The notes beneath the pieces were generated by a model. That model saw only the letters and a list, made by a program, of their open reading frames with translations, was not told where the DNA came from and did no database searches. Shown one piece after another: positions 4,169 to 53,381 of a DNA stretch of 64,000 bases (positions within the stretch are counted from its first letter, which is position 1; every line of letters begins with the position of its first letter). The stretch is from Octopus sinensis (taxonomy: Eukaryota). The stretch lies in assembly GCF_006345805.1 (NCBI RefSeq), contig NC_043010.1, positions 16,616,001-16,680,000 of the forward strand, read 5' to 3'. A program made the translations under genes and the position numbers.

Positions 4169-4207
<39 letters not shown>

Positions 4208-28189: not shown

Positions 28190-28597
28190 CTGCAAGGAAG
28201 TATCTAGTGCTGTGCTGTTTCATTTCTGCCATTTTGCTGCCCTCCTCTCAAACATTACAAATATTATTATATCATTGATAATATCTCAGAACTTCAAAAA
28301 CACGCAATAAACATTGCCATTCCATATCTGTCAAACATCTAACACTGGAATCTGCTATAGATTATCTATAGACTACCATTATTAGAGAGATGCTAGGCTA
28401 CCATAACAATACAATGTGTTAAAATATTAGAAATCAACCATTTACAATTGTCATAATTAAGCTATTGTCAGGAATTGATATACAAGTCTTCTACATAGAA
28501 CATGTTTGACAGAACTTCAGAACTATTTATTAAATTTTAAAGAGAAAACATTAAAAAGTAAAAAAAAGCAAACATATTGAAGGATAAGAGAACTCAC

Positions 28598-31190: not shown

Positions 31191-31248
31191 CTGTTTAGAA
31201 AAGAAAGGAACAAAGTTAGTCTCTTTTAAAATTCTTCAAATGCTGCTG

Positions 31249-34589: not shown

Positions 34590-34975
34590 GGATTTGTACG
34601 TGTGTGTAACAAGAGTCATGTGCAGTATGTGTATGTGTGTGTGTACTGTGTGTGCTTTGTGTATAGTGTGTGTGCGTGCCGTATTGTGTGTGTGTGTGTG
34701 CATGCTGTATTGTGTGTATGTGTACTGTATGTGAGTGTACTGTGTGCGTGTGCTGTATGTTTGTGCTGTATTGTGTGTGCGTATGTGATTTATGTGTGTA
34801 CTGTATGTGTGTTTGTGTGTGTGTGGTGTGTGTGTGTGTGCATGTGGTGTGTGTGTGTGTGGTGTGTGTGCATGTGGTGTGTGTGGTGTGTGTGTGTGTG
34901 TGTGCATGTGATGTGTTGTGTGTGTGTGTGTGCATGTGGTGTGTGTGTATGCATGTGGTGTGTGTGTGTGTGTCA
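34590..34975. repeat. Compound (TG)n / (GTGTGTGCATGTG) simple repeat
   Basis: Direct reading. Confidence 0.95.
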
Positions 34976-35302
34976 AAAGTCCAAAATCTAAAAAATGCCT
35001 TTCTTTGAACCGCTGAAGACAAATTTGTTAAACACGGAATGCGGAATTCTCACCCCCACCCACTCCCCACCAATTGGTTTATGATATTTCTTAAATTTGT
35101 TGACCTTATTTCAGGTGCTCACACCTGCCTTACCAACAGAGAAGAACATTTCTGTTGTCGACTTTATTTCAACGATGACCACCACCCCTACTGCCATTCC
35201 CAAAACTCCACTAGTCAGACAGTAGTCACATTGAGGTTTTAATGATCTTGAAAGACCAAACTTCTTTAAATTCATGGCCAATGAAACGCCTTTGAGGAAA
35301 CC

Positions 35303-35332
35303 GTTGCAACCGAATTGAGTTGCCATGGTTAC
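35303..35332. promoter_or_regulatory. RFX X-box (GTTGCCATGGTTAC, 35319-35332) with an adjacent GTTGCAAC palindrome
   Basis: 13/14 match to the palindromic consensus GTTRCCATGGYAAC, in non-repeat, relatively CpG-retaining sequence. Confidence 0.5.
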
Positions 35333-36789
35333 AGGGTGGGTTTGTATCTGTTTATTTGATGTAACAACAAGTAATTCAAACAGTTCACCAAACCAAAGAT
35401 AAACAGACTGTCCATCCGTAAGCATACTTTTGTCATAAATATTGGTCGTGAAAGAAAACATGGCATTGAAGAGCAATAAACTGCAACTATGAATGTAATG
35501 TGTGGCACTTTATAGATCATGTGACCAGCTTCTGATGTTGGGTTTAGGATTAAAACCTTTCAACAGTTATTTGTCAGTTCTTGCAACCAACTTGATGATG
35601 GTTACAATTGCAATAATAAACTCAGTCTGTGCAAAATGTTTAAGTATGGATTAACCAAACACACAAATGTAAATGCGTGTGTGCATGCGTGTGTGTGTGT
35701 GTGTAGATGCATATTTTCACACAAGATGACAGAGTAAGATTGGTTTACTTTTTCTATCTACAAGTTTTGTTAATGCAAATCCTGGATTCTGTTTACACAC
35801 ACACACACACACACACATACACACAGACAATATCCAGATTCCAAGATTGGGGATGCTGGTTATAGTAGCCGCAACACTTTAAGAAGTAATGACCCCTAAA
35901 GCCTATAGAAATGAAGGCTCCAAAGCCAGTCCTTCCTTGCTGACCAATGGATTATAAAACCATCCTAATCATATGCACCCCTGTTTCTGTTTTTTTTTTT
36001 CTCCCAAGCACAATGTATCTGGGACTACATTGTTTAATGTGTCAATCCTTTTTGATGGCAATGATTATGATTTCCATTAGATTTCTGCAGAGGCGCAATC
36101 ACATGGCTTTATGTTCAGTCTCCTTGCACACCACTTTGGGGAATTGTGTTTTGCTGCAACCCCAAACAGACCAATGCCTTGTGAGTGCATCTGACAGAGA
36201 GAAACTGTACAAAGAGCATCACACACACACACACCTAAACAAACACAAATGTATACACAATATGCCCATACTCACCTAAACCAGCATAAACATCATCATC
36301 ATCTACCGTCCATTGTCCATGCTGGCATGGGTTGGACATAGACACACACACACAAAGGCCTTCTGATTGAATTTGGAAGGCAGAAGTTCCTGTTGTGTGT
36401 GTACATGTGTGTGAAAGTGTTGATGCCTCCTAACAGAGAGGAGGGGTAATATATATATATATATATGCGCACACACACACATATATACATCTAGACATCT
36501 AAATGCCAAGCAACAGAGGCAGACATTATTTTTATGATACGCAGTACCAGACATGTCTGCTCAAAACAGATTGAAGCAGATACGTGAACACCCATTCCCA
36601 TCTCCTGACACACACACACACACATTTTAAATTAAAAAGTAAAGAGCAACCGTTCAAAGGCAAATGTGACATGGACCCTTCATTACCAATTCTTTCATCT
36701 TTTTATTGATTTCAGGGACTGGTCATGCTGCAGTACTGCCTGTGAGGTTTTGCAGTCAGCCACATCTAGTGCCAATACTCATTTTATCA

Positions 36790-37830
36790 AGTGGTCAACA
36801 TAATTTCTTTGATAGAAATGTCAAACACATAAGCACTAATACAGACCCACACATGCATGTAAAGGCAGGGGTGGCTTCTTCTAGATTGCCCATGGGCAAG
36901 GGATGGCAGTACAAACGCTTCTGGGGGTAGGGTGGCAATGAGGTCATGGGTGGAGTAGACATAACCTTAGCAGAGAAATGGGTTGATGAAAAGATGGAGG
37001 TGGAGAGTGTGAAAGGAGTGATACGATTAATGGTAGATGCTAGAGGCTGGACTGACAGATGGACAGAAGGAAGTGTTTCTCTGAGGCTCGTCTGCAATTT
37101 ATCATGACGATGGATGATAATTACATTCTCATCGCTGATGACTTCAACAGACATGGTGGACTGGACTCCAGTGGATTTCAAAATATTCATACAGGTTATA
37201 GCTTTGCTACTAGAAATGAGGAGTGAACAAGGTTGCTGGAGTTCTGGAATGAAAATGAATTGTCGATATCCGACACTAACTGAGGAAACCTGCTAGCCAC
37301 CTGGTCACCTATTGATCTGGTGGGCACACAAACTACATTGACTACATTCTCACCAGAAATAGCAATAGGCCGATGCTGGTGAATGCAAAGTCCTCCTTTT
37401 CTAGTGAAGAATATACTTCCTAACATAGGTTGATAGTGAACTAGAAGGATTCAGAGAGAAACCAATTTAGAAAAGGAAGATATGGAAACTTAAAGATCCA
37501 TGAAACAGAGATTTAATGGTATTCTAATTAAGGAATTTGATAAGAAGGAAGAGGAGACAGAGACCTGTGATGTAGAGGACAACTGGAACGTCTTATGGGA
37601 CAACCTACTGAGGGTCACAGAACAAACCTGTGGCTTGTGCAAAGTTGCAGCCAGATCAAAGGTTACATGATGGTGGAACAGAGAAGTAGACAGAATCATA
37701 AAAGCAAAGAAGAAGGTTTGGAAGTTTTTGAAGAATGTGGGTAACAAAGAACTCTACTATGTACCTAGGGGAGAAGCTAGAAGATAAGGGTTATTAAGTA
37801 AGGGGAAAAGCAGAAAGGAAGAGGTTTGTC
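36790..37830 (+). mobile_element. Decayed RTE-clade LINE fragment (AP endonuclease region and linker)
   Basis: Broken frames give YK.FW.G...GGVDITLAEKWVD, GF.NIH.GY.FATRNEE..RLLEF and WWNREVDRIIKAKKKVWK. Boundaries approximate. Confidence 0.8.
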
Positions 37831-38437
37831 AATATTCTACCTAATTAGTGTGGTGGTGGTGGGTCAATGTGTATGTATCTATGAGTCTAATTCAATAGAA
37901 GAATTTCATATATAAAAAAAAAACCTTATTTGTTTCAACATGAGTTGATGAATTTCTTTCAAATGCAACAAATAACTTCCTAGCCACAAACTCTATTCAG
38001 GGTGTATCGTGTTTATTTCTTGTAAAGGTGCCTACTTCTGGTTTCCATTGGATACTACATTTTTTTTTAGTTCTATTATGTGAGGATCTATTATGTGCTG
38101 CTTCCGTGTTATCAATGTATTCTATGAAGCAGACATCTAAACTGTTGTTGACAGACCAATAGAGTGGGTTTTGTTAACACATCTTGTCACTGTTACACTG
38201 CAGCAGAATAATATTACAGGTAGATTCTGTGTGCAGTTTCATTCCATTGAAACAACTTTTAAAGCATTTACATTCTTCTTTTACCAAATTCTAAATAATT
38301 TTAATAACATCAAGTGATGGTTTGTTGCCAACTTAATGTTGCAGTGCCAGGAAAGGGAATAATGCTACTGCTATTTGGCCCCACGAAACATCATTTCCAG
38401 TTGACTGTGTGATACAAGCATTCTGTGTCCTTATCAG

Positions 38438-38913
38438 TGAGGAGGGTGCTTGTTGGACACTGTGCAGGACGTAAAATAAGACCTGTCAAAGAGCAGTCAA
38501 TGGCTATCCAACAATATGTGTACATGTATATGCATGCGTGAAAATACCTGGGTTAGTGTCCAGGCACACGGTTGGCCCACTGGGAGTGGGAGGACTCTCT
38601 ATTATTGTCATAACATTTGTCAAGGAGAGGAAAACTCGGAGAAAACCTGTGACACTGACAATATCCGATGATGTAGACTAGTTCTTCTTTTCGAGTTTAT
38701 TTTGTCCATGTTCAGGGAGTGGGATTGGCTTTGTGAAAATCCTTTCCCTCTATAAAAAAATCATTATGCACAGGTATCATTTGAAGAAAGAAAAAAAAAC
38801 CTATCACAAAGATGGCTGGTCATAGCCCTCGCATGTGTGGGACTTTCGATCAGGTGATGGAAATACTCAAACAAGCTTGCAATCACACACACACACACAC
38901 ACATACATACACA
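38438..38913 (+). repeat. Flank of maT copy 1, duplicated in inverted orientation at 49453-49912
   Basis: Sequence from gtgaggagggtgc to the left TIR is the reverse complement of 49453-49912, apart from small indels. Confidence 0.9.
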
Positions 38914-40212
38914 CACTGGGTGCAATGGACAAATTGTTGCCATCTTACATTTTTAATTTTGCGTATGTGTATTGTTTTTGATTTTTCAAGTACACAGTAT
39001 AGTAGGGTCAGTTGAGCAGCATCTGTGAAAAAGACACAGCACCATGATGCAGTTCTCTCTGCCAGAAATTTGGAAATGACATGCTGTACTGCTTGACATT
39101 CATGCCGGAAGCTCCAATGCGAACATTTAAGAGTGTTTGGGTGTCAATCTGAGGACAGTGCAGAGAATTCAGATAGAGTTGGATGAATGTAATGGTGATT
39201 ATGAAGGTATGGCAGCTTGGAAAACTCACTCTGATCATTCCGATAAGAAAAGAACTCCTGAATCTGTTGGTGAGATCCAGGCCGTAATGGACAACAAACC
39301 CTCTAAGTCAGTCAGGCCCATCGCCAGGGACATGGGAGTGTCTGAGTTTCTTATCACGCAGGTAATGCATGAAGATGTTCAGTATTCCTCATACAAGATG
39401 AGAAAGGGCCAATTTTTAACCCAAGACATCAAGGACAAGAGGAAAGACCATGCTACGAAGCTTTTGAACAAATGCAAGCATCCCCTCCAACCAAACATGC
39501 TTTGGCTTTACAGGAAAAATCTCTGCCAAGATCAGGCAGTGAACATACAGAACAACCGTTGGCTTACCATGTCCCCAAAACATGTATAGAAACTGATAGA
39601 AATCAAACATCCAGTCAACATCATGGTGTTTGGAGTGATCACTAGTGATGGCGACGTTATGCCTTCATTCATCTTCCCACACAGCTTCAGACTCGACATG
39701 GAGGCCTACATCAAGTGCCTGGAGGAGGTAGTGCTGCCCTGGATCAAGAGGGTGGCTGCTGGAAGACCCTATGTCTGGCAACAGGACTCTGCACTATGCC
39801 GCACAAGCAGGTGAAACCAAGTTATAGCTGTCAGACAATTTCTGCAACCACATCACCCCTAACATCAGACCACCTAACTCCCCACACTGCAACTGCCTTG
39901 ATTATTATGTGTGGGGTGCAGTTGACCAAGAGACCAACAAAACTCTGTGTAACGCCAAAGATGAACTGAAGGCAAGGATTATGGCAGCATTCACCAGCTT
40001 AAACAAGGAAACCGTCCAGAAGAGTTGCAGGAGATTCTGAAATCGTCTGGAGACCCTTGTTGAACCCAATGGCAATTTTATGGAATAAATGTACTCTTTA
40101 GTATTTCAAGATATTTTAATGTAATTTTGGTAAACATATCTGTTAAAATGAGATGTCATGTCATTTTCAGTTTTGCATAATTTAGATGACAGCTTATTCA
40201 CTGCACCCTGTA
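38914..40212 (+). mobile_element. Defective maT-type (DD37D) Tc1/mariner DNA transposon, copy 1
   Basis: Imperfect TIRs (cactgggtgcaatggacaaattgt / cttattcactgcaccctgta). Transposase fragments at 39137-39589 and 39623-39814 continue to WPPNSP-like...LDYY. 37 residues lie between QQD and the final D after correcting a +1 frameshift. Confidence 0.9.
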
Positions 40213-40235
40213 TATGTTATATATATATATATATA

Positions 40236-41492
40236 CACAGGGCTTGGACAAAATAATGGCATCATAGCATCATAATTTTGAAATATCTATAAAACTGTCA
40301 AAAGCTTGTTTAATTTTATGATTTTTGATTTATTATTAGTGTTGCTTTATATGTTTTGCTAAAATTGCTGTTTCTTTTGAGATATCATCAGAAAAAGGTA
40401 ATTAAAATTTATTAAAATGCCAGATCTGTCGGACTTTCAAAGAGGTCACATTGTTGGTGCTCGTAAGGCAGGCACTAGCATAACAGAAACAGCCAAAATG
40501 TTTGGTGTATCAAGAAGTACTGTCTCGAAAGTAATGACAGCCTTTGAGAAAGAGTGAAAAACCTCCTCGTTGAAACAAAACACCGGAAGAATACCAAAAC
40601 TTTCAGATAGGAACTGTCAGACTCTTACACAAATTGTTAGAAAGGATCACAAAAGTACAGCTCCCAAAATTACTGTAGAGAACCTCGAGAACCCATTTTA
40701 CACAAAAATTGTTTGCTGGGAACTGCACAAAGCCAGATTTCACAGGTGGGCTGCAATCAGAAAACCACTACTTTCAAAAACAAACGTTGCAAAGCATTTA
40801 GAGTGGAGCAAAAACTTACAGAATTGGTCCCTAGAGCAGTGGAAGAATGTTATTTTCTTAGATGAGTCATCCTTTACCCTATTTACGACCTCCGGCCGAG
40901 TATACATGTGGAGACAGCTAAAAGAAGCATTTGACCCAGACTGCTTTCTTCCAACTGTTAAATATGGAGGAGGATCTGTGATGATCTAGGGGGCTATATC
41001 TTGGAAATCTGCCAGCCTAGTAGTTTCTCTTCATGGCAGAATAAATACTCAAGACTATTTAAGCATTTTATCTGATCAAATTCATCCTATGGTTGCGGAA
41101 CTGTTTCCGGGGGGAAACACAATCTTTGAGGATGATAATGCACCAATTCACTCAGCTAAAGTTGTTACTGAATGGTAGAAGGAACATTCTCGTGAAGTTA
41201 AACATCTTATCTGGCCGCCACAGTCCCCAGCTCTCAATATTATTGAACATTTATGGTGCATTTTAGAAAAACAAGTAAGGAGTCGATATCCTCCACCATC
41301 ATCACTACAAGAACTGGAGACTGTTTTAGCTGAAGAATGGACAAGAATTCTTTTGGAAACAATTCAAACTTTGTACGAGTCCATACCTTGTAGAATTCAA
41401 GCTGTAATTACTGCCAAAAGCAGTCCTACCCTATATCAAAATAAATTTGTTTGAAATTTTAAGGTGTTTCCATTATTTTGTCTAACCCCTGT

Positions 41493-41493
<1 letters not shown>
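40236..41493 (+). mobile_element. Full-length Tc1-type transposon with DD36E spacing (Incomer-like); transposase has three nonsense codons
   Basis: TA-flanked TIRs cacagggcttggacaaaataatgg / ccattattttgtctaacccctgtg. The frame from ATG 40417 reads MPDLSDFQRG...WKNVIFLDES...EDDNAPIHSAKVVTEW*KEHSREVKHLIWPPQSPALNIIE, with 36 residues between D and E. Confidence 0.92.
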
Positions 41494-41528
<35 letters not shown>

Positions 41529-42382
41529 TTGTATATAGTATGGGTAGATGGAGAACACCAGTTTGACTGAATTTTATTGGTCAACAGCAGTCGGATGGTT
41601 GGGTACATCATCAACTTAGCAGAGAGTGTTGGGAGTGGGTGGGGTAAGATCTGGCGATTTGGCAGAAAATGACATGGATGAGTGACACTTGCAGCTGATT
41701 GACCTTTTCACAAGGGAGGTTACTGGGATTGGACTGAAAAATAAATCCATAACAAATATTTGATAGCAAAAAGATAAAGTCTTAAATCTGTTATTCTCCA
41801 GTCTTGTTAGTTGGGTCATAATGTGTAATTTTTCTGATAAACATGAAGAGTATCATCATACTCCCTCTCTTTATCTATCTATCTATCTATCCACACATAC
41901 ATACATACACATACACACACACAGATATATATGTGTGTATGTGTGTGAGAAAGAAAGACAAGCAGATAGGCAGAGAAAACAACAGGGATAGATATAATGA
42001 AGCTAGACTGTTTAGCTGTGCATTTTAATGGAAACACACTTTAAGTATTAAATAAACAGGAACAGCAACAACAGCATCAGCCACACTAAAACCTGGAAAT
42101 GCCTACAGTTAGAGCTGAATGAAAAATGAAGATGAACAACAAGAGAAGCAGCAGATCGAAACAACAACAACAACAACAACAACAAAAATAGCGGAAAATA
42201 GCACCAAGAAGAGCAGCGAAAGGAAGGAGGTGTAAGATTGAAGGAAAATGGAAGTATAAAAGAAGACGCTGACAAAAACAGATGAAAATGCCGTCAGACC
42301 GATCAAAGAAGCTCGGAACATCTACTTAAAACCAATCAAAACCAAACATCTCATCATCAGGCTTAAAACATGTTTTGTATGC

Positions 42383-42433
<51 letters not shown>

Positions 42434-42712
42434 TGTTTGTGTGTGCGTGTGTCTGCATTTCCTTCCTTTTTCAAACTCGCTCACTCTCTCCATCAACGTT
42501 TATGTAATCTTCTCTTATTTGTGGCTCATTTTTCTCTCTGCACCTCTTTCTATGTCATAAACTACCTCTTTACTTGTTAGTCTATCATCCTCTCTAACAA
42601 TACAATTACCTACCTCTGTATCTAAATATATATATATATATATATATATTAACCAATCTCTATTGATCTATCAACCATGCTACACCTCTCTTTCTCTTTT
42701 TCCCTCTCTCCC

Positions 42713-42759
<47 letters not shown>

Positions 42760-42760
42760 C

Positions 42761-42791
<31 letters not shown>

Positions 42792-44399
42792 TGTGTATAT
42801 CACTCACTATATTGATATTCTCTCCACTGCTCTCTCTCCCTCTCTGTTCTATCTACTTCGTTTCATGCACACTCTCCCTCCACCCAATTATACACATATC
42901 GATCAGTGTGTCTTGCTTATGCAGTCTTTCTCCAATCTTTTGCATTTCCTCAATGAACTTAAACCAAAGTATAACAGGAGAAAAAGGAAAAAAAAATATA
43001 ACAAACAACAACAACAACAACAACAAAAAAACAACCAATCAAGAAAATAAAATAAATTACAAATGTGAAGAGGAAAATAAATCAATAAATTATGATAGGA
43101 GGGTGGGGGGGAGAAGTTTAATGAAGAGAAATAAAAATTGAAAACGAAAAACTGATAAGGAAAAACAAAACTAAAATGCTGCTATTATGTTCACGGCCAA
43201 CCCCCAAAACTGTTCAATGTTCAATAGAAGACAAAATAAATAATTTATCGATTGTGTTGTTGTTGTTTTTAATGTGTTTTTGTTGCAGTTTTAAATTCAA
43301 ATTTAAAACAAAAGAATTTTTAATCCCTCAACAGTGCTTCAAGAGGAATGGAAAGATTAAACTTTGACAGACCCCAAATGTCACCAGGGCAGCTCCGACC
43401 CTTTTCAGTTTTTGTACCTTTTGCAAACAAAAGTTTGCTTTTAATGATCATCCTTTGAAACAGAAATTCTTTCGGATACTTGTCATGCCACCCTCTTTCA
43501 CCTTCTCGCTTAATTCCTTCTCCAATTTCATTCTTTGTTGTTCTTTATATATATCGTTTCATTTATTGTTTTCTGTTGCTTATTTCCCCTTCCCACCTCT
43601 CTCTCTCTTCCTCCTCTCTTTTACACCATTTCCAATTCATTTCTGTCCAAGTATGTTTCCCTGTTCTGTTTCCTATTTTCTTTAAATATTTACCATTTTC
43701 CATTTATCTAATACTTTCTCCACACACACACCATTTATCAAAACCATTTTCTCTCAATGTTTGCCCTACCCCCCCACCTCCTTAGTCTCTCTTTCTCTGT
43801 TCCTCTTGTCTCCCTCTATCTCTCACACTCCCCTTTCTCTCTCTCCCTTTCTTTATTTTCTCTCTCATATTCCTCTCCCCCCTACCTCTCTCCACTTTCG
43901 GTCCATTTCAGGTTTTACTCTTTGCCTTCTTAATTCTTTCTCATTTACAATCTTCTCCTTTTACTCTCCAATTTCCTCTTACACTCAACACCTCTTTCTC
44001 TCTCTCTCTCTCCCTCCCTCTGTTTCCTCTCACCCATTTTGCCTCCAACTCCACCCCCACTCAGGCCCCACACAAACCACCATGTCAAATCCTTTCTCCT
44101 TTGGACAGAATGTCAACCCTCTGGAATCCCTTCCCACAACTGCTCACTTTTTAATTTTACTTGTTTCAGTCATTGGACTATGACCAGGCTGAGGCACCAC
44201 ATTGAAGGGTGTGTGTATATATATATATATATATATATGCTATATTAAATCTCTGAGTGAGATATAAATAGTAGCAATACGGAATCATAACATTTAATTG
44301 CCAACCAAGTGTGGTGTCCTATACAGGACAGTGCTACTGACATTTATAGCTCCAGGAAGACATCTCTTCCAGCTGGCTAACGACACACATTTGTGTCCG

Positions 44400-44795
44400 A
44401 TTAGTATACTTGGTTGGCAAAAATCAAATTTGCTGACTGGCATCCGTGCTAGCGGGGTGCAAAGAGCACCATACGAGTGTGATTGTTGACAGAGCAGCTA
44501 ACAGGCTTCCATGCCAGTGGCACATAAAAGGCACCATTCGAGTGTGATCGTTACCAGCGTCGCCTTACTGGCACTTGTGCCCATGCTAGTAGGGTGCTAA
44601 GAGCACCATCCAAGCATGATCGTTGCCAGAGCGGCTAACTAGCTTCCGTGCTGGTGGCACGTAAAAGGCACCATTCGAGTGTGATCATCACCAGCGTTGC
44701 CTTACTGGCACCTATGCCGGTGGCATGTGTGAAAAGATTCGAGCGAGGTCATTGCTAACACGGAAAGCGGATGTTAAACGATGATGATGATGATA
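44400..44795 (+). mobile_element. RTE-tail family element with internal tandem subunits
   Basis: Repeated gcaccat(t/c)c(g/a)ag(t/c)(g/a)tgatc...gtggca units and a (GAT)n tail. Confidence 0.7.
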
Positions 44796-44806
44796 TATAT
44801 ATAGAT

Positions 44807-45183
44807 ATAGACATCACTAAAATAAATAAGGGTGCTAGTCAGCACCAGCATTGCTAGAAATATGAATATAGTTTAGCCATGGGGAAGCACTTATCTAATG
44901 ACTGACAAAGGAGACAAGCTCCCTACAGCAAGCAAGACAGAGCCAGATCATCGATGATTTCGGATTTGATTAATCCTCATCAGTGATTCTCACCCAGTTG
45001 CTGAGGGTTAAAGCTAACTCACTTTGTCAGTTTATAGAAATCAGAGGCTGATTCCATAAATGGTAAAAGTGAAAATTGTAAATTATTAAAGTAGTTTATT
45101 TGCAATTCACAACCAAAAGGCACAAGTATAGATGTCACTAAGGTGACCAAGGCTGCTAGTCAGTGCCAGCATTGCTAGAAATA
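44807..45183 (-). mobile_element. Hammerhead-containing unit with ~56-bp terminal direct repeats (period 321 bp); non-LTR-retrozyme or Penelope pLTR-like
   Basis: Direct repeats 44807-44862 and 45128-45183 (about 80% identical by eye) bracket the ribozyme. No ORF. Confidence 0.5.
44939..44990 (-). ncRNA. Type I hammerhead ribozyme
   Basis: Minus strand reads AGAAUCA-CUGAUGA-GGAUU(AAUCA)AAUCC-GAAA-UCAU(CG)AUGA-UC|UGGCUCU. All core nucleotides are present. Stem II has 5 bp with G10.1-C11.1, stem III is palindromic, the cleavage triplet is AUC, and stem I has 6 of 7 pairs. Confidence 0.82.
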
Positions 45184-45195
45184 AGAGAACAACAA

Positions 45196-46396
45196 TTAGG
45201 TTGGCAAGAAAGTAATTTCGGTTTTTTAATGTGAAGTAAAAGTCATTTAATCAATTATATATTTTCCATTTTGTTTGATGATCTTTTGCCATCATTCTAA
45301 CAACATCATGATTCTGCACTCATTGACCTTCTGACCCTTATCAGCCAAAAACTGAAGCAAGTGTGATTTTAGGTCATCGTCATTATTAAAAGTTTTACCT
45401 TTCAAAGAATTTTGCAAACTTCAAAATAAATGGTAATCTGATAGTGACATCACTTCCCAACCAAGCTCCAATGATTTTTCACAAGTTAGCAAAGACATGT
45501 GTGGTCTAGCGTTATAATTGTGGAACACGATTCCTTTACGATTTGCTGATTCTAGCTGTTTTTCTTTTATTGCTTCCTCCAGTTTCATTAGTTGTTGACA
45601 GTAAACATCTGAATTGATTGTTTGGTTCCTTGGAAGCAGCTCAAAATACACAACACCTTTGTAATCTTACCAAATTGACAGCATGGCCTTTTTTGATGCA
45701 GTTCAGCTTTTGATGTGGTTTGTGCTGTTATTGTAGACAATCCACTTTTCATCACCAATGATGATTCGTTTAAAAAAATAGGTTGATTTCATTGTGTTTG
45801 AGATGCATATTGAAAATATTGATTCGTTGTGTTAAGTGAATCTCTTTCAGTTTATGTGGAACTCAAATATCGAGCTTCTTAATGAGTCAAAGTCATTTTA
45901 AGTGATTTTCAATTGTTATGTGTGATACATTTAACCTCTCTGCAATCTCTCGCGCAGTTATATGACAATCAGATTCAATTATGGCTTTGATTCGGTCATC
46001 ATCAACTTCGGGAGGCTGACCAAAATATTAGTCATCATTGAGTGAAAAATTTCCAGAAGGGAATTTTTTAAAACCATTTCTGACATGAGCATTCTGTTCA
46101 GCAATCAACACCATAAACTTCACATATCACTTTGTGAGGCTCAGCACCTTTCTTGCCTTTACAGAAATAAAAAAAAAAGCAAATTATGGCGAAAATGTTT
46201 GTTTTTGCATTCCATGTTAAAATTGGCACTGAACTAACAGCTGTAAACAAAATTACGTACAATTTGCTTTTAAAGTAAGCTAAAAGTAATGACCATCAAT
46301 TGTCAAAAGGAAGAATCATAACATTGACAAAAGTAATTTAAAAAATTGTAACTCTATCTACTTGCGAAAAACGAAATTAGTTTCTTGCCAACCCAA
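45196..46396 (-). mobile_element. Decayed mariner element (mellifera-like sequence)
   Basis: TIRs ttaggttggcaagaaagtaatttcg / cgaaattagtttcttgccaacccaa. ORF 45421-45651 contains YCQQLMKL..IKEK...KGIVFH.NARPH...LGWEV...DYHLF. Confidence 0.88.
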
Positions 46397-46588
46397 TATA
46401 TATATATATATGTCTACACTCGCGGAGTGGTTGGCGTTAGGAAGGGCATCCAGGTGTAGAAACACTGCCAGATCAGACTGGAGCCTGGTGCAGCCTCCTG
46501 GCTTCCCAGACCCCGGTCGAACCGTCCAACCCGTGCTAGCGCAGAAAACGGACGTTAAATGATGATGATGATGATATATATATTTATA

Positions 46589-47804
46589 TTAGGTTGTTTC
46601 ACATGAGACGTCATATTTGAAAGGTAACAATAAAATGTTTGCGAAGTGTTAGAAAACTGATTTATTTAATCAAAGTATGATCCATGTTCATTTATGACCT
46701 TTACCCAACACTTCTCTGTGTCATATATTCCATCTTTAAAAAGAAATTCATCTTTTGCTGTGATAAACCGTCCGTATGCTTCATTTACCTCTTCTCTATT
46801 TAAGAATGTTTTATTGCTTATGAAAAGCCAAACATACTTAAATAAGTGATGATCAGTAGGAGAGATATCAGGGGAACAGAGAGGATGTTGCAAAATCTCA
46901 TAATTTAGGCTTTGCAACTTTTGGACCGTAGCTTGAGGAGTGTGAGGACGTGCATTGTTGTGGAGCAACATTGGGTCATCTCTATTCACTAGTCTGGGTT
47001 GCTTCTTTTTCAAATTCTCATGCATACACTCAGTTTCCTGTTGCAAAAATGAATAATGAATAACTTCCTTCGCAGACTACCATACAGTGACCACAAACTT
47101 TTTAGGGTGCAATGGTGGGTTTGGGTAGTGTTTAGGTGATTCCCCTGCATCTAATTACTGTCCTGTTCTGCTGCTGTTGTCAAAGAGTATCCATTTCTCA
47201 TCACAAGTAACGATTTCATGCAAAACTGGTCTTTTTCCAGTTGATAAAGCAGTAAGGAGTACACTTTGATGTGTATGTTTTTTTGAATCTCATTCATTTG
47301 ATGTGGAACAAACATCCATTTTCTTGAATTTTCCAATTTTTTACAGGTGTCCAAAAACAGTTATGTGAGATGTTTGGAGTTCTGACGGAAGTTTCCGAAC
47401 CTTTTTTCTCGGATTTTGTTCAACCAAAGCATTTAATCCATCATGACGAATAACTGATTTTGGCCTACTCCTTGGTCTATTTCCAAGGCTATCATCTCCT
47501 GAACGAGAGCTTTGGAACCATCTCTGAACAGTTCTGATGTCAACAAAACCATTACTAAAGGCCCACTTAATAGTCTGTAGAGTTTCTGCAGCAGAGTGAC
47601 CCATTTTGTACTCATACGAGAAAATCGTTCAACATAGTTTGGTTGTTATCATTTTCATAAGGTCTGTGGGTACGAATTCTGTATACCAATATTGTTGGGA
47701 AAGAAAAAGAGTCAAGATTAAAGGTAAGGCATACATAATTGAGTTTTTAAATGACTGAAATAACAAGTAATTAAAAATGCAACATTTCATGTGAAATAAC
47801 CTAA
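46589..47804 (-). mobile_element. Decayed mariner element (DD34D spacing, Hsmar1/cecropia-like sequence)
   Basis: TA-flanked TIRs ttaggttgtttcacatg / catgtgaaataacctaa. ORFs 47341-47604 (HTH: AETLQTI...RTVQRWF) and 46666-47046 (LLHNNARPH...SPDISPTDHHLF...GSYFD). Confidence 0.9.
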
Positions 47805-47811
47805 TATATAT

Positions 47812-47865
<54 letters not shown>

Positions 47866-48143
47866 ATCATCATCATCATCGTTTAATGTCCATTTTCCAT
47901 GCTGGCATGGGTTGGATGGTTTGACTGGGGTCTGGGAAGCCAGGAGGCTATACCAGGCTCCAGTCTGATCTGGCAGTGTTTCTACAGCTGGATGCCCTTC
48001 CTAACACCAACTACTCCGAAAGTGTAGTGGGTGCTTTTTACATGCCACTGGCACAGGGGCCAGAGGAGGCTGGCATCGACATATAGACACACACACACAT
48101 ATATATATGTATGTATGTACATGTGTGTATGTATATATATATA

Positions 48144-49452
48144 CATAGGTTGTGCTGAATAAATTGTAACCTAAATATCTAAGTTATGTACAAATGAAAA
48201 TAACATTGACATCTCATTTTAAAAGATACATTTACCAAAATTACATAAAAATATCTTGAAATATTAAAGAGTAAATTTATTCAGTAAAATTGCCATTGGC
48301 TTCAACCAGGGCCTCCAGACAATTTCGGAATATCCTGCAACTCTTCTGGATGGTCTCCTTGTTTAAGTTGGTGAATGCTGCCATAATCCTTGCCTTCAGT
48401 TCATCTTTGGTTTTACAAAGACTTTTTTTGGTCTCTTGCTCAGCTGCGTTCCATGCATAATAATCAAGAGAGTTGCAGTGTGGGGAGTTAGGTGGCCAGA
48501 TGTTAGGGTGATGTGGTCGCAGAAATTGCCTAGCAGCCATAACTTGGTTTCACCTGCTTGTGCGGTATAGTACAGAGTCCTGTTGCCAGACATAGGGTCT
48601 TCCAGCAGCCACCCTCTTGATCCAGGGCAGCACTACCTCCTCCAGGCACTTGATGTAGGCCTCCATGTCGAGTCTGAAGCCGTGTGGGAAGATGAATGGA
48701 GGCATAACGTCGCCATCACTAGTGATCACTCCAAACACCATGATGTTGACTGGATGTTTGATTTTTATCAGTTTCTATACATGTTTTGGGGACATGGTAA
48801 GCCAATGGTTGTTCTGTATGTTCACTGTCTGATCTTGGCAGAGATTTTTCCTGTAAAGCCAAAGCATGTTTGGTTGGAGGGGATGCTTGCATTTGTTCAA
48901 AAGCTTCGTAGCATGGTCTTTCCTCTTGTCCTTGATGGCTTTAGGATAAAAATTGGCCCTTCTTCATCTTGTATGAGGAATACTGAATGTCTTCATACAT
49001 TACCTGCATGATAAGAAACTCAGACACTCCCATGTCCCTGGCGATGGGCCTGACTGACTTGGAGGGATTGTTGTCCATCACAGCCTGGATCTCACCAACA
49101 GATTCAGGAGTTCTTTTCTTATCGGAATGATCAGAGTGAGTTTTCCAAGCTGCCATACCTTCATAATCACCATTACATTCATCCAACTCTATCTGAATTC
49201 TCTGTACTGTCCTCAGATTGACACCCAAACACTCTGAAATGTTTGCATTGGAGCTTCTGGCACGAATGTCAAGCAATACAGCATGTCATTTCCAAATTTC
49301 TGGCAGAGTGAACTGCATCATGGTGCTGTTTTTTTTTTCACAGACGGTGTCCAACTGACCCTACTATACTGTGTAGTTGAAAAATAAAAAACAATGCACA
49401 TACGCAAAATTAAAAATGTAAGATGGCAACAATTTGTCCATCGCACCCAGTG
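48144..49452 (-). mobile_element. Defective maT-type (DD37D) Tc1/mariner DNA transposon, copy 2 (inverted relative to copy 1)
   Basis: ORFs 48941-49276, 48550-48741 and 48277-48540 are near-identical to the copy 1 fragments. TIRs at both ends. Confidence 0.9.
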
Positions 49453-49912
49453 TGTGTGTGTGATTGCAAGCTTGTGTTTGAGTATTTACATCACCTGATC
49501 GAAAGTCCCACACATGCAAGGGCTATGACCAGCCATCTTTGTGATAGGTCTTTTTTTCTTTCTTCAAATGATACCTGTGCATAATGATTTTTTATAGAGG
49601 GAAAGGATTTTCACAAAGCCAATCCCACTCCCTGAACATGGACAAAATAAACTCGAAAAGAAGAACTAGTCTACATCATCGGATATTGTCAGTGTCGCAG
49701 GTTTTCTCCGAGTTTTCCTCTCCTTGACAAATGTTATGACAATAACAGAGAGTCCTCCCACTCCCAGTGGGCCAACCGTGTGCCTGGACACTAACCCAGG
49801 TATTTTCACGCATGCATATTGTTGGATAGCCATTGACTGCTCTGGAGCCCTTCTCCCCTTTGACAGGTCTTATTTTTCGTCCTGCACAGTGTCCAACAAG
49901 TACCCTCCTCAC
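49453..49912 (-). repeat. Flank of maT copy 2, inverted duplicate of 38438-38913
   Basis: See 38438-38913. Confidence 0.9.
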
Positions 49913-50744
49913 CAAGCAAGCTTGATGGGGTTGCCAATTTAGTCACCGATGACCCAAACATGCAGCAGGTTGTACTGGGTTACATGTTACCAGTAGCATT
50001 CAAGAGCGACCTGACATAATATATATGTATATATATATGAAGAAGGGAACATTGAATTTTTGGAATAATAGATCTGTGAACCCTACTTAGTCAGTAGGGC
50101 CACTTCCTATGTCTTGTAAGTTCTACTCAATCAGAATTACACACCAACAACTACTAGAATATTTTTTTTTACTTGTTATGTTCTTATCAGGATTATGGAA
50201 TCAGTCCACTAAAACCTTAAACTCTGGCTCATCATTTGATGGTACTACCAACTCCATCTCCTCTAATTGGTAATTAGATTAATTACATACTTGTTACATT
50301 GCTTGGAAACACACAACATACCTAGCGAAATTGAATCATCAGACTCCCTAATATGTTAGAAATATGAGTTGAAAAGTTGCAGCTCTGCCGATGACACTTT
50401 TTCTTAGATTATTTATGGAAGGACTTTCAAAATAATTAAATAAAAGAAAGAACTTGCAAAATTGAAGAAAAAAAAATTATTTAAAAAATCTGTAAATAAG
50501 AATTATTTTGCAAAGGATTGGTAAGATGATCCCTCAAACTTGACTCACATCATGTTTTTAGATAAATTTCTAATAAATCCTCGTTTGTCGATGCCCAAAA
50601 TCTAATTTGATTACTTTCACTGCCACAAACAATCAAATCAAAATCAAGGAAAGTGGAAATTTTAATGCTTTACATTAGGATTTACATTTCAACAACAACA
50701 AGAGCAACAATCCAAAAGAAAGGAAGAAAATTTGGTCTTCTTAC

Positions 50745-50818
50745 TGGTTTCGGCAAAACTTTGAGCGTCAACTGGGCATTTTCCAACTGGTGATTGCTCT
50801 GTGTCAGTAACTGTACAC
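50745..50818 (-). CDS. Second coding exon (74 nt) completing the RRM-like domain
   Basis: Acceptor attctgttgtag|, donor CCA|gtaaga. It enters in phase 1 and exits in phase 0, exactly bridging exon 1 (phase 1) and the large exon (phase 0). It encodes (G)VQLLTQSNHQLENAQLTLKVLPKP, similar to the 'VL..xHxLxxxxLxVxP' end of such RRMs. Confidence 0.8.
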
Positions 50819-52426
50819 CTACAACAGAATGGTTAGATCTGAGAGTGTTGGTTGGTAGTATTAGTGCTAAGATTTGTTTCAAATTTTTGCACAAGGTCAG
50901 TTATTTTGGAAGAAGGCTCAACTGGTACTTTTTTTTATCAACCCCCAAATGGACAAACGACAAAAATAGCTTCAGCAGAATTTGAACTCAGAACATGAAA
51001 ATGGACAAAATGCTGTTAGGCATTTCATCTGGCATGCTAACAGTCTTGCCAGTTCGCTGCTTACTGCGTTGGTGATTATATTACTCTAGTGAGATGAGAT
51101 TTGTTTGGATGGTTGGATGGAGATGTGAAGTTCAGTTGGAGGTGTGGGTCAGAAAGGATTTTTTTATCCCTGTTAAAATGGCAAAAATTGATAAAGGGTC
51201 AAGGTAATAATGGTCAGCAAGTTTAGGACACTGAAGAGGTTTTCTCTGTTGACTCATTTTTTAAAAATATCTTTTAATATTTTTATGAAGAAAAGTACTG
51301 ACACCACAAAAAAGGCACCCAGTACACTCAGTAAAGTTGTTGGCATGAGGAAGAGAACCCTGCTGCAGGGACCATACAAAAGCTACAGACATGCAGCTCA
51401 GGTCAGGAAAACAAGCGTTATGAGATGCCACTTGAAGACTGTAAAGAATCTGGCTGGAGTGCAGTACACTTTCCTGTAGAAGTTGGATGGAGATGTTTTA
51501 TTAGAACCAGATTGAGACAGTGCCTGCTGTCATTTGGGTGTCAAACATTGGTAAGCAAATGCCACCTTGAAACAGATCCATGTGACAGTTAAGGGATCCA
51601 GCTAGAGAGGAGATGATCCTGAAATGGACTTAAGATTGAATACTAGTCAGTCAAACCAGTAAGTGGGGCCTCCATGAGCATGGGGCAATCAGTGTGTTGT
51701 AAAACTTTTGAGAGGAAAGTCCCTACTGGTATTTAATATGCAAAGTTTTCGACTGACTATGTTTGCACAAGCAAACTGTTTCCAAGTCTCTCCATGTTGC
51801 TATGGATCTTTATTTGTTTTTGATCCATTTTCCCACACAAGCATGGGTTAGAGGAATAAATTACTGAGGCTTTAATTTGCAGCCAGATGTCCTTCCTGTT
51901 GCTGGCTCTTGTCTGTATTTTCAAGTGAGGGATCTCCTATGTCACATATCCGCAAAGGTATTAAATGAGTGGATGATTTGTTGACAGAAGTGACAGCATC
52001 TGTATTGTTTGTAATTTGTGACTTAAATACAATGCAAATGTAAACACACACATGCACACAAACTCACACACACACACAAACACAGATGCATTAAGTGATC
52101 AACTGGCAAAGTCATTTGAGCTGAGCAGAGGTTGTTTTGCAATAATTTTTCTGGCTTTCTGTATTCTGAGCATCCCATCAAGGTTAACTTTGCCTTTCAT
52201 CCTTTGGGAATTGAAAAATAGAGTACTTCTCATGTACTGGGATCAATTCTCTCTCTTTCCCTTTCTGGAAAAAATCAGCTGTGTTCAGACATAGTGAAGA
52301 GTAGGTCTGCCAGATCTGAAGAGGAAAAGAAGGAAGGCAAAAACATACTGTATGTCACAGTGGCCTACTAGCAACTCCACAAGGAGTTGTGGGCCTAAAG
52401 CAGGGTGATGTGTGTGTGTGTATGTA

Positions 52427-52639
52427 TTCTGTAAATAATAATTTTTAAGCTTAAAGCTTGTAAGTGATTACCATGTTTTGGCTAAAAAAAATAATCTAAT
52501 ATTGGTGCATAAATGCCCTCGATGTTAAAACGGGTTGCATCAAAGGCTTCTATGCCTCAATATTTGACTATTTTTTTAGCCAATTTACAGTAATCACTTA
52601 TAAGCTTAAAGCTTATAATTATTATTATGATTTACAGAA
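52427..52639. repeat. Imperfect inverted repeat (~75-bp arms), MITE-like
   Basis: ttctgtaaat...taagcttaaagcttgtaagtgattac...ttggctaaaaaaaata is mirrored by tatttttttagccaa...gtaatcacttataagcttaaagctta...atttacagaa. Confidence 0.7.
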
Positions 52640-52713
52640 CTGTCATTCATCATCACTTCTCCATTTAGTGCAGAAAATGCATGTGTATGTATGTATGTAT
52701 GTATGTATATATT

Positions 52714-52748
<35 letters not shown>

Positions 52749-53113
52749 CTACTACAAATATAGTTTCTTGGTGTTATTTGTTCTAAATTAACTATCATAC
52801 TCTTTTACTTGTTTCATTCGTTTGACTGTGGCCATGCTGAAGCACCACCTTTAGTTGAGCAAATCGACCCCAAGACTTATTCTTTGTAAGCATGGCCACG
52901 GTTAAATGACTGAAAGAGTTAAAAGAGTTAACCAACAATAAGATCCATATCAGAATTTTAATAAAAAGAAAGTTAAGAGTTTGAAACCAGCTGTTCCCTG
53001 AAATATATTGGTGAAAACATGACTTAATTGTAAAACTGAAATTTCAGGCAGAAAGGAAGACACAGAAAATAGGTGAGGTGATCACTGCTGTGTGAAAGTG
53101 AAAACAAACTCAC

Positions 53114-53298
53114 CTTTATGATGTTTATAAAGAAGTACAGCCTCATTGTTACGCAGCGGGTAGGCTATATCCGTTATGTAACTGCCCCCATGTTCCTGAC
53201 CATTGAAGTACTCCAGAAGTTGACTCTTGTCGAAGTTCTCTGGAATGTTTGATACATGCACCTCCATACCTCCACATACACTGCACATTTTGCAGCCA
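53114..53298 (-). CDS. Identical tandem duplicate of the first coding exon (downstream copy); ATG at 53288
   Basis: Same 185-nt exon and same splice sites, offset 682 bp from the upstream copy. Confidence 0.7.
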
Positions 53299-53342
53299 CT
53301 GCAATGAGAAAACAGAGAGAAAAGGGTGTAAGTTGGAGAGAG

Positions 53343-53381
<39 letters not shown>

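What the first reader, a model, noticed from the sequence alone, without database searches (positions are those of the whole stretch)
44939..44990. Intact type I hammerhead ribozyme in sense orientation within the intron of the macrodomain gene
Seen: a complete core (CUGAUGA...GAAA...UC), stem II GGAUU/AAUCC, stem III formed by the 12-nt palindrome AUCAUCGAUGAU, stem I AGAAUCA/UGGCUCU with one mismatch, and predicted cleavage after position 44946. Established: minimal type I hammerheads with palindromic stem III occur in Penelope-like elements and non-LTR retrozymes and often cleave as dimers. It is on the same strand as the host pre-mRNA, and the core is intact although the surrounding repeats are about 20% diverged. 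Inference: it may cut the nascent transcript co-transcriptionally and affect splicing of the 19.5-kb intron or gene output.
Basis: partly seen in the sequence, partly recalled or inferred. Interest (0 to 1): 0.8.

Follow-up and report, generated by a model that had tools for sequence, protein, structure and literature searches.

The report
Retroelement-derived hammerhead ribozyme in an intron
A complete hammerhead self-cleaving RNA motif really is present in an intron of a PARP14-like macrodomain gene, on the gene's strand, but it looks like a lone leftover of a small ribozyme-carrying retroelement that needs a second copy to fold actively, so it is probably an ordinary passenger and not a regulator of the gene.

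Summary
On the minus strand, 44990->44939 reads AGAAUCA-CUGAUGA-GGAUU(AAUCA)AAUCC-GAAA-UCAUCGAUGA-U-C^UGGCUCU. This is a type I hammerhead with every invariant core base, G10.1-C11.1, a 12-nt palindromic helix III and a 7-position helix I (one A.C mismatch, one G.U). A descriptor finds only this site in the window and none in 300 shuffles.

It lies in a 321-nt, 38.6% GC, strongly self-paired unit (44866-45186) followed by a 60-nt partial second unit. A SINE-like tail and a mariner-like element flank it, and no RT or GIY-YIG ORF is nearby. It sits in sense in a 19,517-nt interval between consensus splice sites of a minus-strand gene with an RRM_PARP14_3 exon and a Macro exon.

The best reading is a solo unit of a non-LTR-retrozyme or Penelope-type hammerhead repeat.

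The functional inference is not supported:
- The monomer catalytic fold is 9-10 kcal/mol worse than a competing hairpin, against 0-1.4 for 29 control hammerheads.
- A double hammerhead is near isoenergetic, but only one copy exists here.
- Neutral decay at the observed divergence leaves the motif intact in about 1 of 10 copies.

Family copy number and orthologous conservation could not be tested. Interest is low.

The parts
44939..44990 (-). Type I hammerhead ribozyme motif. Helix I 5' strand 44990-44984; CUGAUGA 44983-44977; helix II and loop 44976-44962; GAAA 44961-44958; palindromic helix III 44958-44947; C17 44946; helix I 3' strand 44945-44939. Predicted cleavage between 44946 and 44945.
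   Evidence: Direct reading. Descriptor hit unique in the window, 0 of 300 shuffles. Energetics.
44866..45186 (-). One 321-nt repeat unit carrying the hammerhead. GC 38.6%, highly self-paired. The hammerhead sits at the tip of a long imperfect hairpin with arms 44894-44910 / 45022-45038.
   Evidence: Direct repeat spacing of 321 nt. MFE -91.8 kcal/mol, z = -4.7. Inverted repeat I20. GC content.
44806..44865 (-). Partial second unit or terminal redundancy. It is 60 nt, 82% identical to 45127-45186, and ends at a (TA)n/(GAT)n microsatellite.
   Evidence: Repeat family D4; blastn.
44444..44812 (+). Flanking SINE-like repeat with an internal 137-nt tandem duplication and a (GAT)n(TA)n tail. It is not part of the hammerhead unit and bounds it on the low-coordinate side.
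   Evidence: TRF. Other copies in the window at 62444-62647 and 3862-4189.
45195..46397 (.). Flanking internally deleted mariner-like element with 31-nt terminal inverted repeats. It bounds or truncates the hammerhead unit on the high-coordinate side.
   Evidence: Inverted repeat I1, 90% complementary. Pfam Transposase_1 and HTH fragments.
53114..53298 (-). Host gene exon: putative ATG at 53288, first part of an RRM_PARP14_3-like domain, donor AAAG|GTGAGT after 53114. The upstream boundary of the intron holding the hammerhead.
   Evidence: Pfam RRM_PARP14_3; sequence.
33486..33596 (-). Putative next host exon: acceptor TTTATAG| before 33596, 3' end uncertain. The intron 53113..33597 is 19,517 nt.
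   Evidence: Splice consensus. Joining it to the upstream exon raises RRM_PARP14_3 from 25.7 to 29.8 bits and extends profile coverage from position 52 to 62 of 82.
28554..31190 (-). Large host exon ending in a Macro domain. It establishes the host gene's strand and identity.
   Evidence: Pfam Macro, 75.6 bits, E 4e-21. Acceptor CAG| before 31190.

Best explanation
It is a genuine type I hammerhead ribozyme sequence belonging to a solo, old copy (about 1.2 units of 321 nt) of a small non-autonomous hammerhead-bearing retroelement. The closest kind is the metazoan non-LTR retrozyme or Penelope-like-element repeat.

In such elements, tandem units are transcribed. Pairs of hammerheads form a double hammerhead through their palindromic helix III. 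Cleavage releases unit-length RNAs with 5'-OH and 2',3'-cyclic phosphate ends. These are ligated into highly self-paired circles and copied back into DNA by a retroelement reverse transcriptase. This life cycle comes from the literature and was not tested here.

This copy landed, or was carried, in sense orientation in a 19.5-kb intron of a PARP14-like macrodomain gene. It was later boxed in by a SINE-like element and a mariner-like element. As a single copy it mostly adopts an inactive hairpin. It is therefore expected to cleave the host pre-mRNA rarely, if at all, and to have no selected function for the gene.

Shown here: the motif, its non-random nature, the repeat unit, the self-pairing, the strand, the flanking exons, and the thermodynamic preference for the inactive monomer or the active dimer.

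Inferred: family membership, the life cycle, and the lack of a host effect.
For: - Motif complete and unique in the window, with 0 of 300 shuffles giving any hit.
- 321-nt direct-repeat spacing with 60 nt of a second unit.
- Unit GC 38.6%.
- Unit folds with z = -4.7, with the hammerhead at a hairpin tip.
- These features match the published description of non-LTR retrozymes: roughly 150-450-bp units, GC below 45%, type I hammerhead, highly self-paired (PMC7229834).
- Monomer catalytic fold is -3.5 kcal/mol against an MFE of -12.4 kcal/mol. The difference is 9.8 kcal/mol, against 0-1.4 for 29 control type I hammerheads.
- The trans double hammerhead is -23.3 kcal/mol against -24.8 for two inactive monomers. 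This fits the dimer-type architecture described for metazoan and Penelope-like hammerheads (PMC4209133).
- No second hammerhead, and no decayed one, anywhere in the window.
- Neutral survival of the motif at the observed divergence is 8-11%.
- Intronic copies are common: 43.9% of Xenopus tropicalis retrozyme copies overlap introns (bioRxiv 10.64898/2026.07.22.740005).
Against: - No other copy of the 321-nt unit exists in the 64-kb window, and the source genome could not be searched. Multi-copy status, which defines a mobile element, is untested.
- Only one full unit with one hammerhead is present, so the tandem-repeat criterion is not met as it stands.
- No RT or GIY-YIG remnant lies nearby.
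- Helix III in cis (4 bp plus a tetraloop) is longer than the 1-2 bp typical of metazoan type I hammerheads. Nearest-neighbour energies ignore the tertiary stabilisation of the core. Appreciable monomer activity therefore cannot be excluded.
- Core, helix II and helix III together (38 nt) show no disruption. This has only about 1.5-3% probability under the crude neutral model if the ancestor was identical.
Confidence: 0.78

Rival explanations
1. Exapted intronic ribozyme. The hammerhead has been retained by selection and cleaves the nascent pre-mRNA in cis, tuning splicing or output of the PARP14-like gene. This would parallel the conserved intronic hammerheads of amniotes or the CPEB3 ribozyme.
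For: - Sense orientation within a long intron.
- All core bases and helices II and III are flawless although neighbouring repeats differ by about 18%.
- The motif lies about 8.1 kb after the donor and about 11.3 kb before the acceptor. A ribozyme with kobs of 0.1-0.8 per min, as measured for mussel and coral retrozymes (PMC7229834), would have minutes to act. This is my inference, assuming elongation at kilobases per minute.
- Precedents exist (PMC6155905; PMC10274809).
Against: - The monomer catalytic fold is disfavoured by 9-10 kcal/mol, and no second copy exists in cis.
- Intactness is expected for about 1 in 10 neutral copies, and the finding was selected for being intact.
- No conservation data are available.
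- Helix I carries a mismatch and a wobble.
- Slow hammerhead cleavage inside an intron did not impair splicing in the published experiments summarised in PMC2995048.
Confidence: 0.05
2. Remnant of the pseudo-LTR of an autonomous Penelope-like element whose coding part has been lost, and not a retrozyme unit.
For: - Penelope-like elements carry type I hammerheads in their terminal repeats (PMC4209133).
- They often show a short terminal extension and a bias for microsatellite targets (PMC8557442).
- Here the unit has a 60-nt terminal redundancy and abuts a (TA)n/(GAT)n tract.
- Retrozymes are themselves proposed to derive from these pseudo-LTRs.
Against: - No RT or GIY-YIG fragment on the hammerhead strand between about 43.3 and 47.6 kb; only mariner-type fragments.
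- The hammerhead has a 5-bp helix II without the extra base after A9, and it has a real helix III. The Penelope 'minimal' variants have a large helix II with a bulge and little or no helix III.
Confidence: 0.15
3. Chance resemblance: a hairpin-rich AT-rich repeat that happens to match the hammerhead consensus.
For: - Rfam reports no hammerhead family.
- The isolated 52-mer does not fold as a hammerhead.
- A loosely defined descriptor would, by my estimate, give a few chance hits per gigabase-sized genome.
Against: - 0 of 300 shuffles give any hit.
- The actual motif far exceeds the descriptor minima. By my estimate it is about 1e-8 per window and well under one per genome.
- Rfam also misses canonical control hammerheads.
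- A palindromic helix III plus a self-paired unit of about 320 nt is the specific signature of known hammerhead repeats.
Confidence: 0.02

Closest known systems
Metazoan non-LTR retrozymes (Cervera and de la Pena 2020, PMC7229834)
   Same: Type I hammerhead. Unit of about 320 nt, within the reported 150-450 bp. GC below 45%. Highly self-paired RNA with the ribozyme embedded. Helix III a short stem with a palindromic tetraloop. Invertebrate host.
   Different: Only about 1.2 units and one hammerhead here, not a tandem array. Family copy number, circular RNA and activity are unknown. Helix III (4 bp in cis, 12-nt palindrome) is longer than usual.
Hammerheads of Penelope-like elements, including the dimer-acting minimal variants (Cervera and de la Pena 2014, PMC4209133; Lunse et al. 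2017, known to me only from reference lists)
   Same: Type I topology. Palindromic helix III positions that allow a double hammerhead. Poor predicted monomer activity. Association with repeats and microsatellite-adjacent insertion.
   Different: No RT or GIY-YIG ORF nearby. Helix II is 5 bp without the extra nucleotide after A9. A real helix III is present.
Double-hammerhead satellites and viroids (newt satellite 2, avocado sunblotch viroid; described in PMC4209133)
   Same: The single-hammerhead fold is unstable, and the active structure forms between two copies through an extended helix III.
   Different: Those occur as multimeric transcripts. Here a lone copy is embedded in a Pol II intron.
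[quoted passage not shown]
   Same: Type I hammerhead in sense orientation in an intron of a protein-coding gene, thought to descend from retroelement hammerheads.
   Different: Those are defined by deep conservation and by loop-loop tertiary contacts that support monomeric activity. Neither is shown here, and Rfam HH9/HH10 models give no hit.
CPEB3 HDV-like intronic ribozyme (PMC10274809)
   Same: A self-cleaving RNA in an intron whose cleavage competes with completion of splicing.
   Different: A different ribozyme class, conserved across mammals, active as a monomer and tested experimentally.

Membership tests
Hammerhead ribozyme, type I | Invariant core: C3 U4 G5 A6 N7 G8 A9, G12 A13 A14, A15.1-U16.1 pair, H17 (not G) | tested here: met
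   CUGAUGA ... GAA-A ... U-C read directly; passes the descriptor.
Hammerhead ribozyme, type I | Three helices around the core, with helix I open-ended and helices II and III closed by loops | tested here: met
   Helix I has 6 of 7 pairs. Helix II has 5 bp plus a 5-nt loop, beginning G10.1-C11.1. Helix III has 4 bp plus a UCGA loop, or a 12-bp duplex in a dimer.
Hammerhead ribozyme, type I | Match to curated covariance models (Rfam Hammerhead_1, HH9, HH10 and others) | tested here: inconclusive
   No hammerhead family at gathering score or at E<=10. The same scan also reports no Hammerhead_1 hit for canonical type I hammerheads from metagenomes, only RAGATH-1-hammerhead at 26 bits, below its cut-off of 56.3.
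Hammerhead ribozyme, type I | Catalytic three-way-junction fold accessible to a single molecule | tested here: not met
   HHR fold -3.5 against MFE -12.4 kcal/mol. Difference 9.8 kcal/mol against 0-1.4 for 29 controls. A two-molecule double hammerhead is within 1.5 kcal/mol of two inactive monomers. Nearest-neighbour energies ignore tertiary contacts.
Hammerhead ribozyme, type I | Site-specific self-cleavage giving 2',3'-cyclic phosphate and 5'-OH ends | not testable with these tools
   Requires in vitro transcription or RNA end mapping.
Metazoan non-LTR retrozyme | Short tandem repeats (about 150-450 bp), two or more units, each with a type I hammerhead | tested here: not met
   One full 321-nt unit plus 60 nt of a second, and a single hammerhead. 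The flanks are occupied by a SINE-like and a mariner-like element, so truncation of a former array is possible but not shown.
Metazoan non-LTR retrozyme | Low GC (below 45%) and a highly self-paired unit RNA | tested here: met
   GC 38.6%. MFE -91.8 kcal/mol, z = -4.7, 0 of 100 shuffles as stable. The same z on the other strand shows this is a DNA-level inverted-repeat property.
Metazoan non-LTR retrozyme | Multi-copy family dispersed in the genome and expressed as circular RNA | not testable with these tools
   No other copy in the 64-kb window. The source genome is not in any searchable collection: searches found nothing, and searches gave zero matches.
Penelope-like element pseudo-LTR | Direct repeats flanking an RT plus GIY-YIG ORF on the same strand | tested here: not met
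   Minus-strand ORF fragments of at least 28 aa between about 43.3 and 47.6 kb hit only mariner Transposase_1 and HTH families in Pfam.
Domesticated intronic hammerheads (amniote HH9/HH10 type) | Sense orientation inside an intron of a protein-coding gene | tested here: met
   RRM_PARP14_3 exon at 53298-53114 and Macro exon at 31190-28554, both on the minus strand. Consensus donor and acceptor define a 19,517-nt interval containing the motif. This is a gene model only; there are no transcript data.
Domesticated intronic hammerheads (amniote HH9/HH10 type) | Conservation at the orthologous site across distant species | not testable with these tools
   No orthologous locus could be retrieved.

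The most novel reading that the evidence does not exclude
The lone hammerhead is a functional switch for the PARP14-like gene. Either it cleaves the nascent intron in cis at a useful rate despite the competing hairpin. Or it is cleaved in trans when abundant RNAs of the same repeat family pair with it through the 12-nt palindrome and helix I, forming a double hammerhead. In the second case retroelement expression would be coupled to the output of a macrodomain (ADP-ribose-binding) gene. It would be the first exapted intronic hammerhead outside amniotes.
Probability: 0.04. Interest if true: 0.7.

Novelty: new member of a known kind. Interest (0 to 1): 0.2.

Why it matters
If the ordinary reading is right, this is one more retroelement-borne hammerhead. 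Such motifs number in the hundreds to thousands in many invertebrate genomes and often lie in introns. Its value is mainly for annotation.

It also gives two practical warnings. Rfam hammerhead models as run here miss short type I hammerheads, so descriptor searches are needed. And an intact core is not evidence of selection at this level of divergence.

It would matter only if the site proved to be conserved, or proved to cleave in vivo. Then it would extend host-recruited intronic ribozymes to invertebrates and offer a tractable case of co-transcriptional self-cleavage competing with removal of a long intron.

Tried and rejected
- **Rfam.** I ran cmscan at gathering score on the whole window, then at E<=10 on 541 nt and on 91 nt. 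No hammerhead family appeared. I do not count this as evidence against the motif, because control hammerheads are also missed.
- **Host protein and organism.** A word-index search with the macro-domain region gave no hit. Exact look-ups of the big ORF with two alternative starts and of ten other window ORFs found nothing on record. Orthologous loci could therefore not be fetched, and the organism remains unidentified. The SINE-like repeats with a (GAT)n tail and the mariner load looked cephalopod-like to me from memory only. I do not rely on this.
- **Public collections, exact pattern with this helix III.** Metagenomes, viral contigs and GTDB genomes each gave zero matches.
- **Public collections, pattern fixing only helix II.** This returned 27 marine metagenome loci. 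Their hammerheads have GC-rich stable helix III and are a different group. I used them only as controls.
- **Penelope-type ORFs next to the motif.** I found none.
- **More copies in the window.** I looked for a second or decayed hammerhead and for further copies of the 321-nt unit, and found none.
- **tRNA-like heads in the flanking SINE-like repeats.** I found none.
- **Compensatory change in the 60-nt repeat.** I considered that the hairpin GGUGCU/AGCACC in the repeat shows a compensatory change between the two copies. By eye the changes give wobbles or a mismatch on the plus strand only, so I rejected this.
- **Papers not held.** Two papers could not be read.

Full report
**1. The observation**

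The plus strand at 44939-44990 reads AGAGCCAGATCATCGATGATTTCGGATTTGATTAATCCTCATCAGTGATTCT. Its reverse complement is AGAAUCA CUGAUGA GGAUU AAUCA AAUCC GAAA UCAUCGAUGA U C UGGCUCU.

- This is a type I hammerhead. Helix I is open, and helices II and III are closed.
- All invariant positions are present: C3-A9 as CUGAUGA, G12-A14, the A15.1-U16.1 pair and C17. Helix II begins with the usual G10.1-C11.1 pair.
- Helix III is the perfect palindrome AUCAUCGAUGAU. In cis it gives 4 bp and a UCGA loop. Between two molecules it gives a 12-bp duplex.
- Helix I pairs A-U, G-C, A-U, A.C (mismatch), U.G, C-G, A-U.
- Cleavage would fall between 44946 and 44945.

The motif lies on the minus strand.

**2. Is it more than chance?**

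- A CUGAUGA...GAAA...UH pattern alone is common: 12 matches against 5.8 expected.
- A descriptor that also requires the three helices finds only this site on either strand. It finds nothing in 300 dinucleotide-preserving shuffles.
- Allowing one core mismatch adds no further site.
- My rough calculation for a motif of this quality (five Watson-Crick pairs in helix II, a perfect 12-nt palindrome, helix I with at most one mismatch) is about 1e-8 per window. That is far below one per gigabase-sized genome.

Rfam gives no hammerhead hit at gathering score or at E<=10 on 541 nt or 91 nt. I tested what that negative is worth.

- A metagenome scan for the same helix II returned 27 loci with textbook type I hammerheads.
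- A permissive Rfam scan of four of these loci reports no Hammerhead_1, Hammerhead_3, HH9 or HH10 match.
- It reports only RAGATH-1-hammerhead at 26 bits, well under its cut-off of 56.3.
- The Rfam negative is therefore uninformative for short type I hammerheads.

**3. Surroundings**

The window is eukaryotic, AT-rich (37% GC) and dense with microsatellites and transposon fossils.

- The hammerhead lies in a stretch bounded by 60-nt direct repeats, 44806-44865 and 45127-45186. They are 82% identical and 321 nt apart.
- Read on the hammerhead strand, this is one 321-nt unit (45186->44866) followed by the first 60 nt of a second unit.
- On the low-coordinate side the partial unit ends at a (TA)n/(GAT)n tract. 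This tract is the tail of a SINE-like repeat on the plus strand (44444-44812). That repeat has other copies in the window.
- On the high-coordinate side lies an internally deleted mariner-like element with 31-nt inverted termini, 45195-46397. It carries Transposase_1 and HTH fragments.
- No other copy of the 321-nt unit exists in the window.
- Minus-strand ORF fragments between about 43.3 and 47.6 kb hit only mariner-type families. There is no reverse transcriptase and no GIY-YIG nuclease.

The unit has 38.6% GC. It folds far better than shuffles: -91.8 kcal/mol, z = -4.7. The hammerhead sits at the tip of a long imperfect hairpin with arms 44894-44910 / 45022-45038. The complementary strand folds equally well, so this is an inverted-repeat property of the DNA.

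**4. Host gene**

- On the minus strand, a 2.6-kb exon (31190-28554) ends in a Macro domain (Pfam 75.6 bits).
- An upstream exon (53298-53114, ATG at 53288) matches the third RRM of PARP14.
- The upstream exon ends in a consensus donor, AAAG|GTGAGT.
- A polypyrimidine-TAG acceptor precedes 33596.
- Joining the two exons raises the RRM_PARP14_3 score from 25.7 to 29.8 bits. It also extends the match from profile position 52 to 62 of 82.
- The hammerhead lies about 8.1 kb after the donor and about 11.3 kb before the acceptor, in sense.

Two caveats apply.

- The exon at 33596 and the Macro exon are not in compatible phase as I drew them. A splice site or a small exon is therefore missing.
- The first exon lies in a 693-bp segment duplicated in tandem at 99.86% identity.

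Neither caveat affects the hammerhead's intronic, sense position. There is no transcript evidence.

**5. Would it work where it is?**

- Nearest-neighbour folding puts the catalytic three-way junction at -3.5 kcal/mol. A hairpin in which the CUGAUGA box pairs with the UCAUC half of the helix III palindrome is at -12.4 kcal/mol.
- With 20-150 nt of native flanks, enforcing the hammerhead costs 11 kcal/mol.
- As a yardstick, for 29 metagenomic type I hammerheads the catalytic fold is the minimum-energy fold or lies within 1.4 kcal/mol of it. For this one the gap is 9.8 kcal/mol.
- A two-molecule double hammerhead, with the 12-bp intermolecular helix III, scores -23.3 kcal/mol. Two inactive monomers score -24.8 kcal/mol.

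The sequence is therefore built like the dimer-acting hammerheads of satellite repeats, retrozymes and Penelope-like elements. Published examples show the same pattern.

- Single copies of such hammerheads cleave poorly or undetectably, while dimers cleave well (PMC4209133).
- Axolotl retrozyme monomers reach 6-22% cleavage in an hour, against efficient dimers (PMC7229834).

Here no second copy exists within 64 kb.

These energies omit the tertiary stabilisation of the core. A 4-bp helix III is also not weak by the standards of invertebrate retrozyme hammerheads, which cleave at 0.1-0.8 per min. Low-level monomer activity therefore cannot be excluded.

Cleavage, if it occurred, need not matter. 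Published work summarised in PMC2995048 and PMC2288634 reports two things:

- Introns cut co-transcriptionally by a hammerhead are still spliced, because the exons stay tethered to the polymerase.
- Only a fast ribozyme abolished splicing.

**6. Is the intact core a sign of selection?**

- The two 60-nt repeats differ at 11 of 60 positions (95% interval 10-30%). This suggests roughly 10% change per copy, if they were identical at insertion.
- I mutated a repaired version of the 52-mer at 9-10.5% per site. The descriptor remained satisfied in 8-11% of trials, and the 13 invariant bases were untouched in 24-29%.
- That the whole 38-nt core plus helices II and III carries no defect is less likely, at 1.5-3%, under the same crude model. 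But the ancestor is unknown, the divergence estimate is loose, and only intact copies get noticed.
- Hammerhead repeats number in the hundreds to thousands in comparable genomes: 235 Rfam hits in the giant squid (PMC6962438) and about 5,000 in a mussel. About 44% of Xenopus tropicalis retrozyme copies are intronic.

An intact intronic copy is therefore expected by chance.

**7. Conclusion and comparison with known kinds**

- It works like, and most probably descends from, the hammerhead repeats called non-LTR retrozymes. A recent preprint proposes these to be non-autonomous derivatives of Penelope-like element termini.
- It meets the retrozyme criteria of ribozyme type, unit size, GC content and self-pairing.
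- It fails the tandem-array criterion as it stands, with about 1.2 units and one ribozyme. Its copy number and circular RNA could not be tested.
- It is not adjacent to a Penelope-type ORF, and its hammerhead is closer to the canonical retrozyme form than to the Penelope minimal variants.
- It shares position and orientation with the domesticated intronic hammerheads of amniotes. It lacks any evidence for the conservation that defines them.

I therefore file it as a new member of a known kind: a solo, probably inert, retroelement hammerhead.

Its attribution to Penelope or retrozyme-type elements is reasonable. Its functional inference is unsupported.

**8. What could not be done**

- The source genome and its relatives are not in any collection I could search. 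Searches found nothing, and searches gave zero matches.
- Family size, consensus, covariation and orthologous conservation, which are the decisive computations, therefore remain open.

Noticed in passing
window 52735-53427 and 53417-54109: A 693-bp segment is duplicated in tandem (682-bp period) at 99.86% identity. It includes the putative first coding exon (RRM_PARP14_3-like) of the host gene and its donor site. This is either a very recent duplication or an assembly artefact. It makes the first intron either 19.5 or about 20.2 kb.
   Followed up: partly
window 33486-33596 and 31190: As drawn, the exon starting at 33596 ends in phase 1, while the Macro exon after the CAG acceptor at 31191 needs phase 0. 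A different donor or a small unrecognised exon must lie between them.
   Followed up: no
window 28554-31235 (minus): A single 2.6-kb exon encodes about 770 residues of low-complexity, Ser/Arg/Asp-rich sequence followed by a Macro domain. A word-index search of the macro region against 5.8 billion proteins gave no hit at E<=0.001, so the gene is very divergent or its lineage is absent from the database.
   Followed up: partly
window 44444-44812, 46417-46590, 62444-62812, 3803-4189, 55726-55948: A SINE-like repeat family ends in GGA(C/T)GTTAAA(C/T)(GAT)n followed by (TA)n. The copy next to the hammerhead has an internal 137-nt tandem duplication (84%). ARAGORN finds no tRNA-like head between 40 and 50 kb.
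   Followed up: partly
window 45195-46397; also 44405-44431: An internally deleted mariner-like element has 31-nt inverted termini (90% complementary). A third, solitary copy of the same terminus lies about 790 bp upstream, on the other side of the SINE-like repeat and the hammerhead unit. This suggests nested or rearranged insertions.
   Followed up: no
window 44780-44849 (minus): A weak Rfam mir-598 match (17.8 bits, far below the cut-off of 69) is produced by the (GAT)n tract plus the start of the 60-nt repeat. The giant squid genome paper reports 172 mir-598 hits, which might reflect a similar repeat-derived artefact.
   Followed up: no
L011 (seven sites between 101 and 3666, minus); also L006, L017, L020, L023, L025: Marine metagenome contigs carry several type I hammerheads in the same orientation, at spacings from about 210 to about 1,270 nt. 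There are seven in the 4.2 kb of L011. Helix I and II sequences vary but stay compensated. Rfam hammerhead models do not report them. Only RAGATH-1-hammerhead scores, below threshold.
   Followed up: partly
window 42000-44100: A pyrimidine-rich (CT-rich) low-complexity block with strong negative GC skew (-0.32) lies just downstream of the hammerhead unit on the host-gene strand. Its origin is not examined.
   Followed up: no
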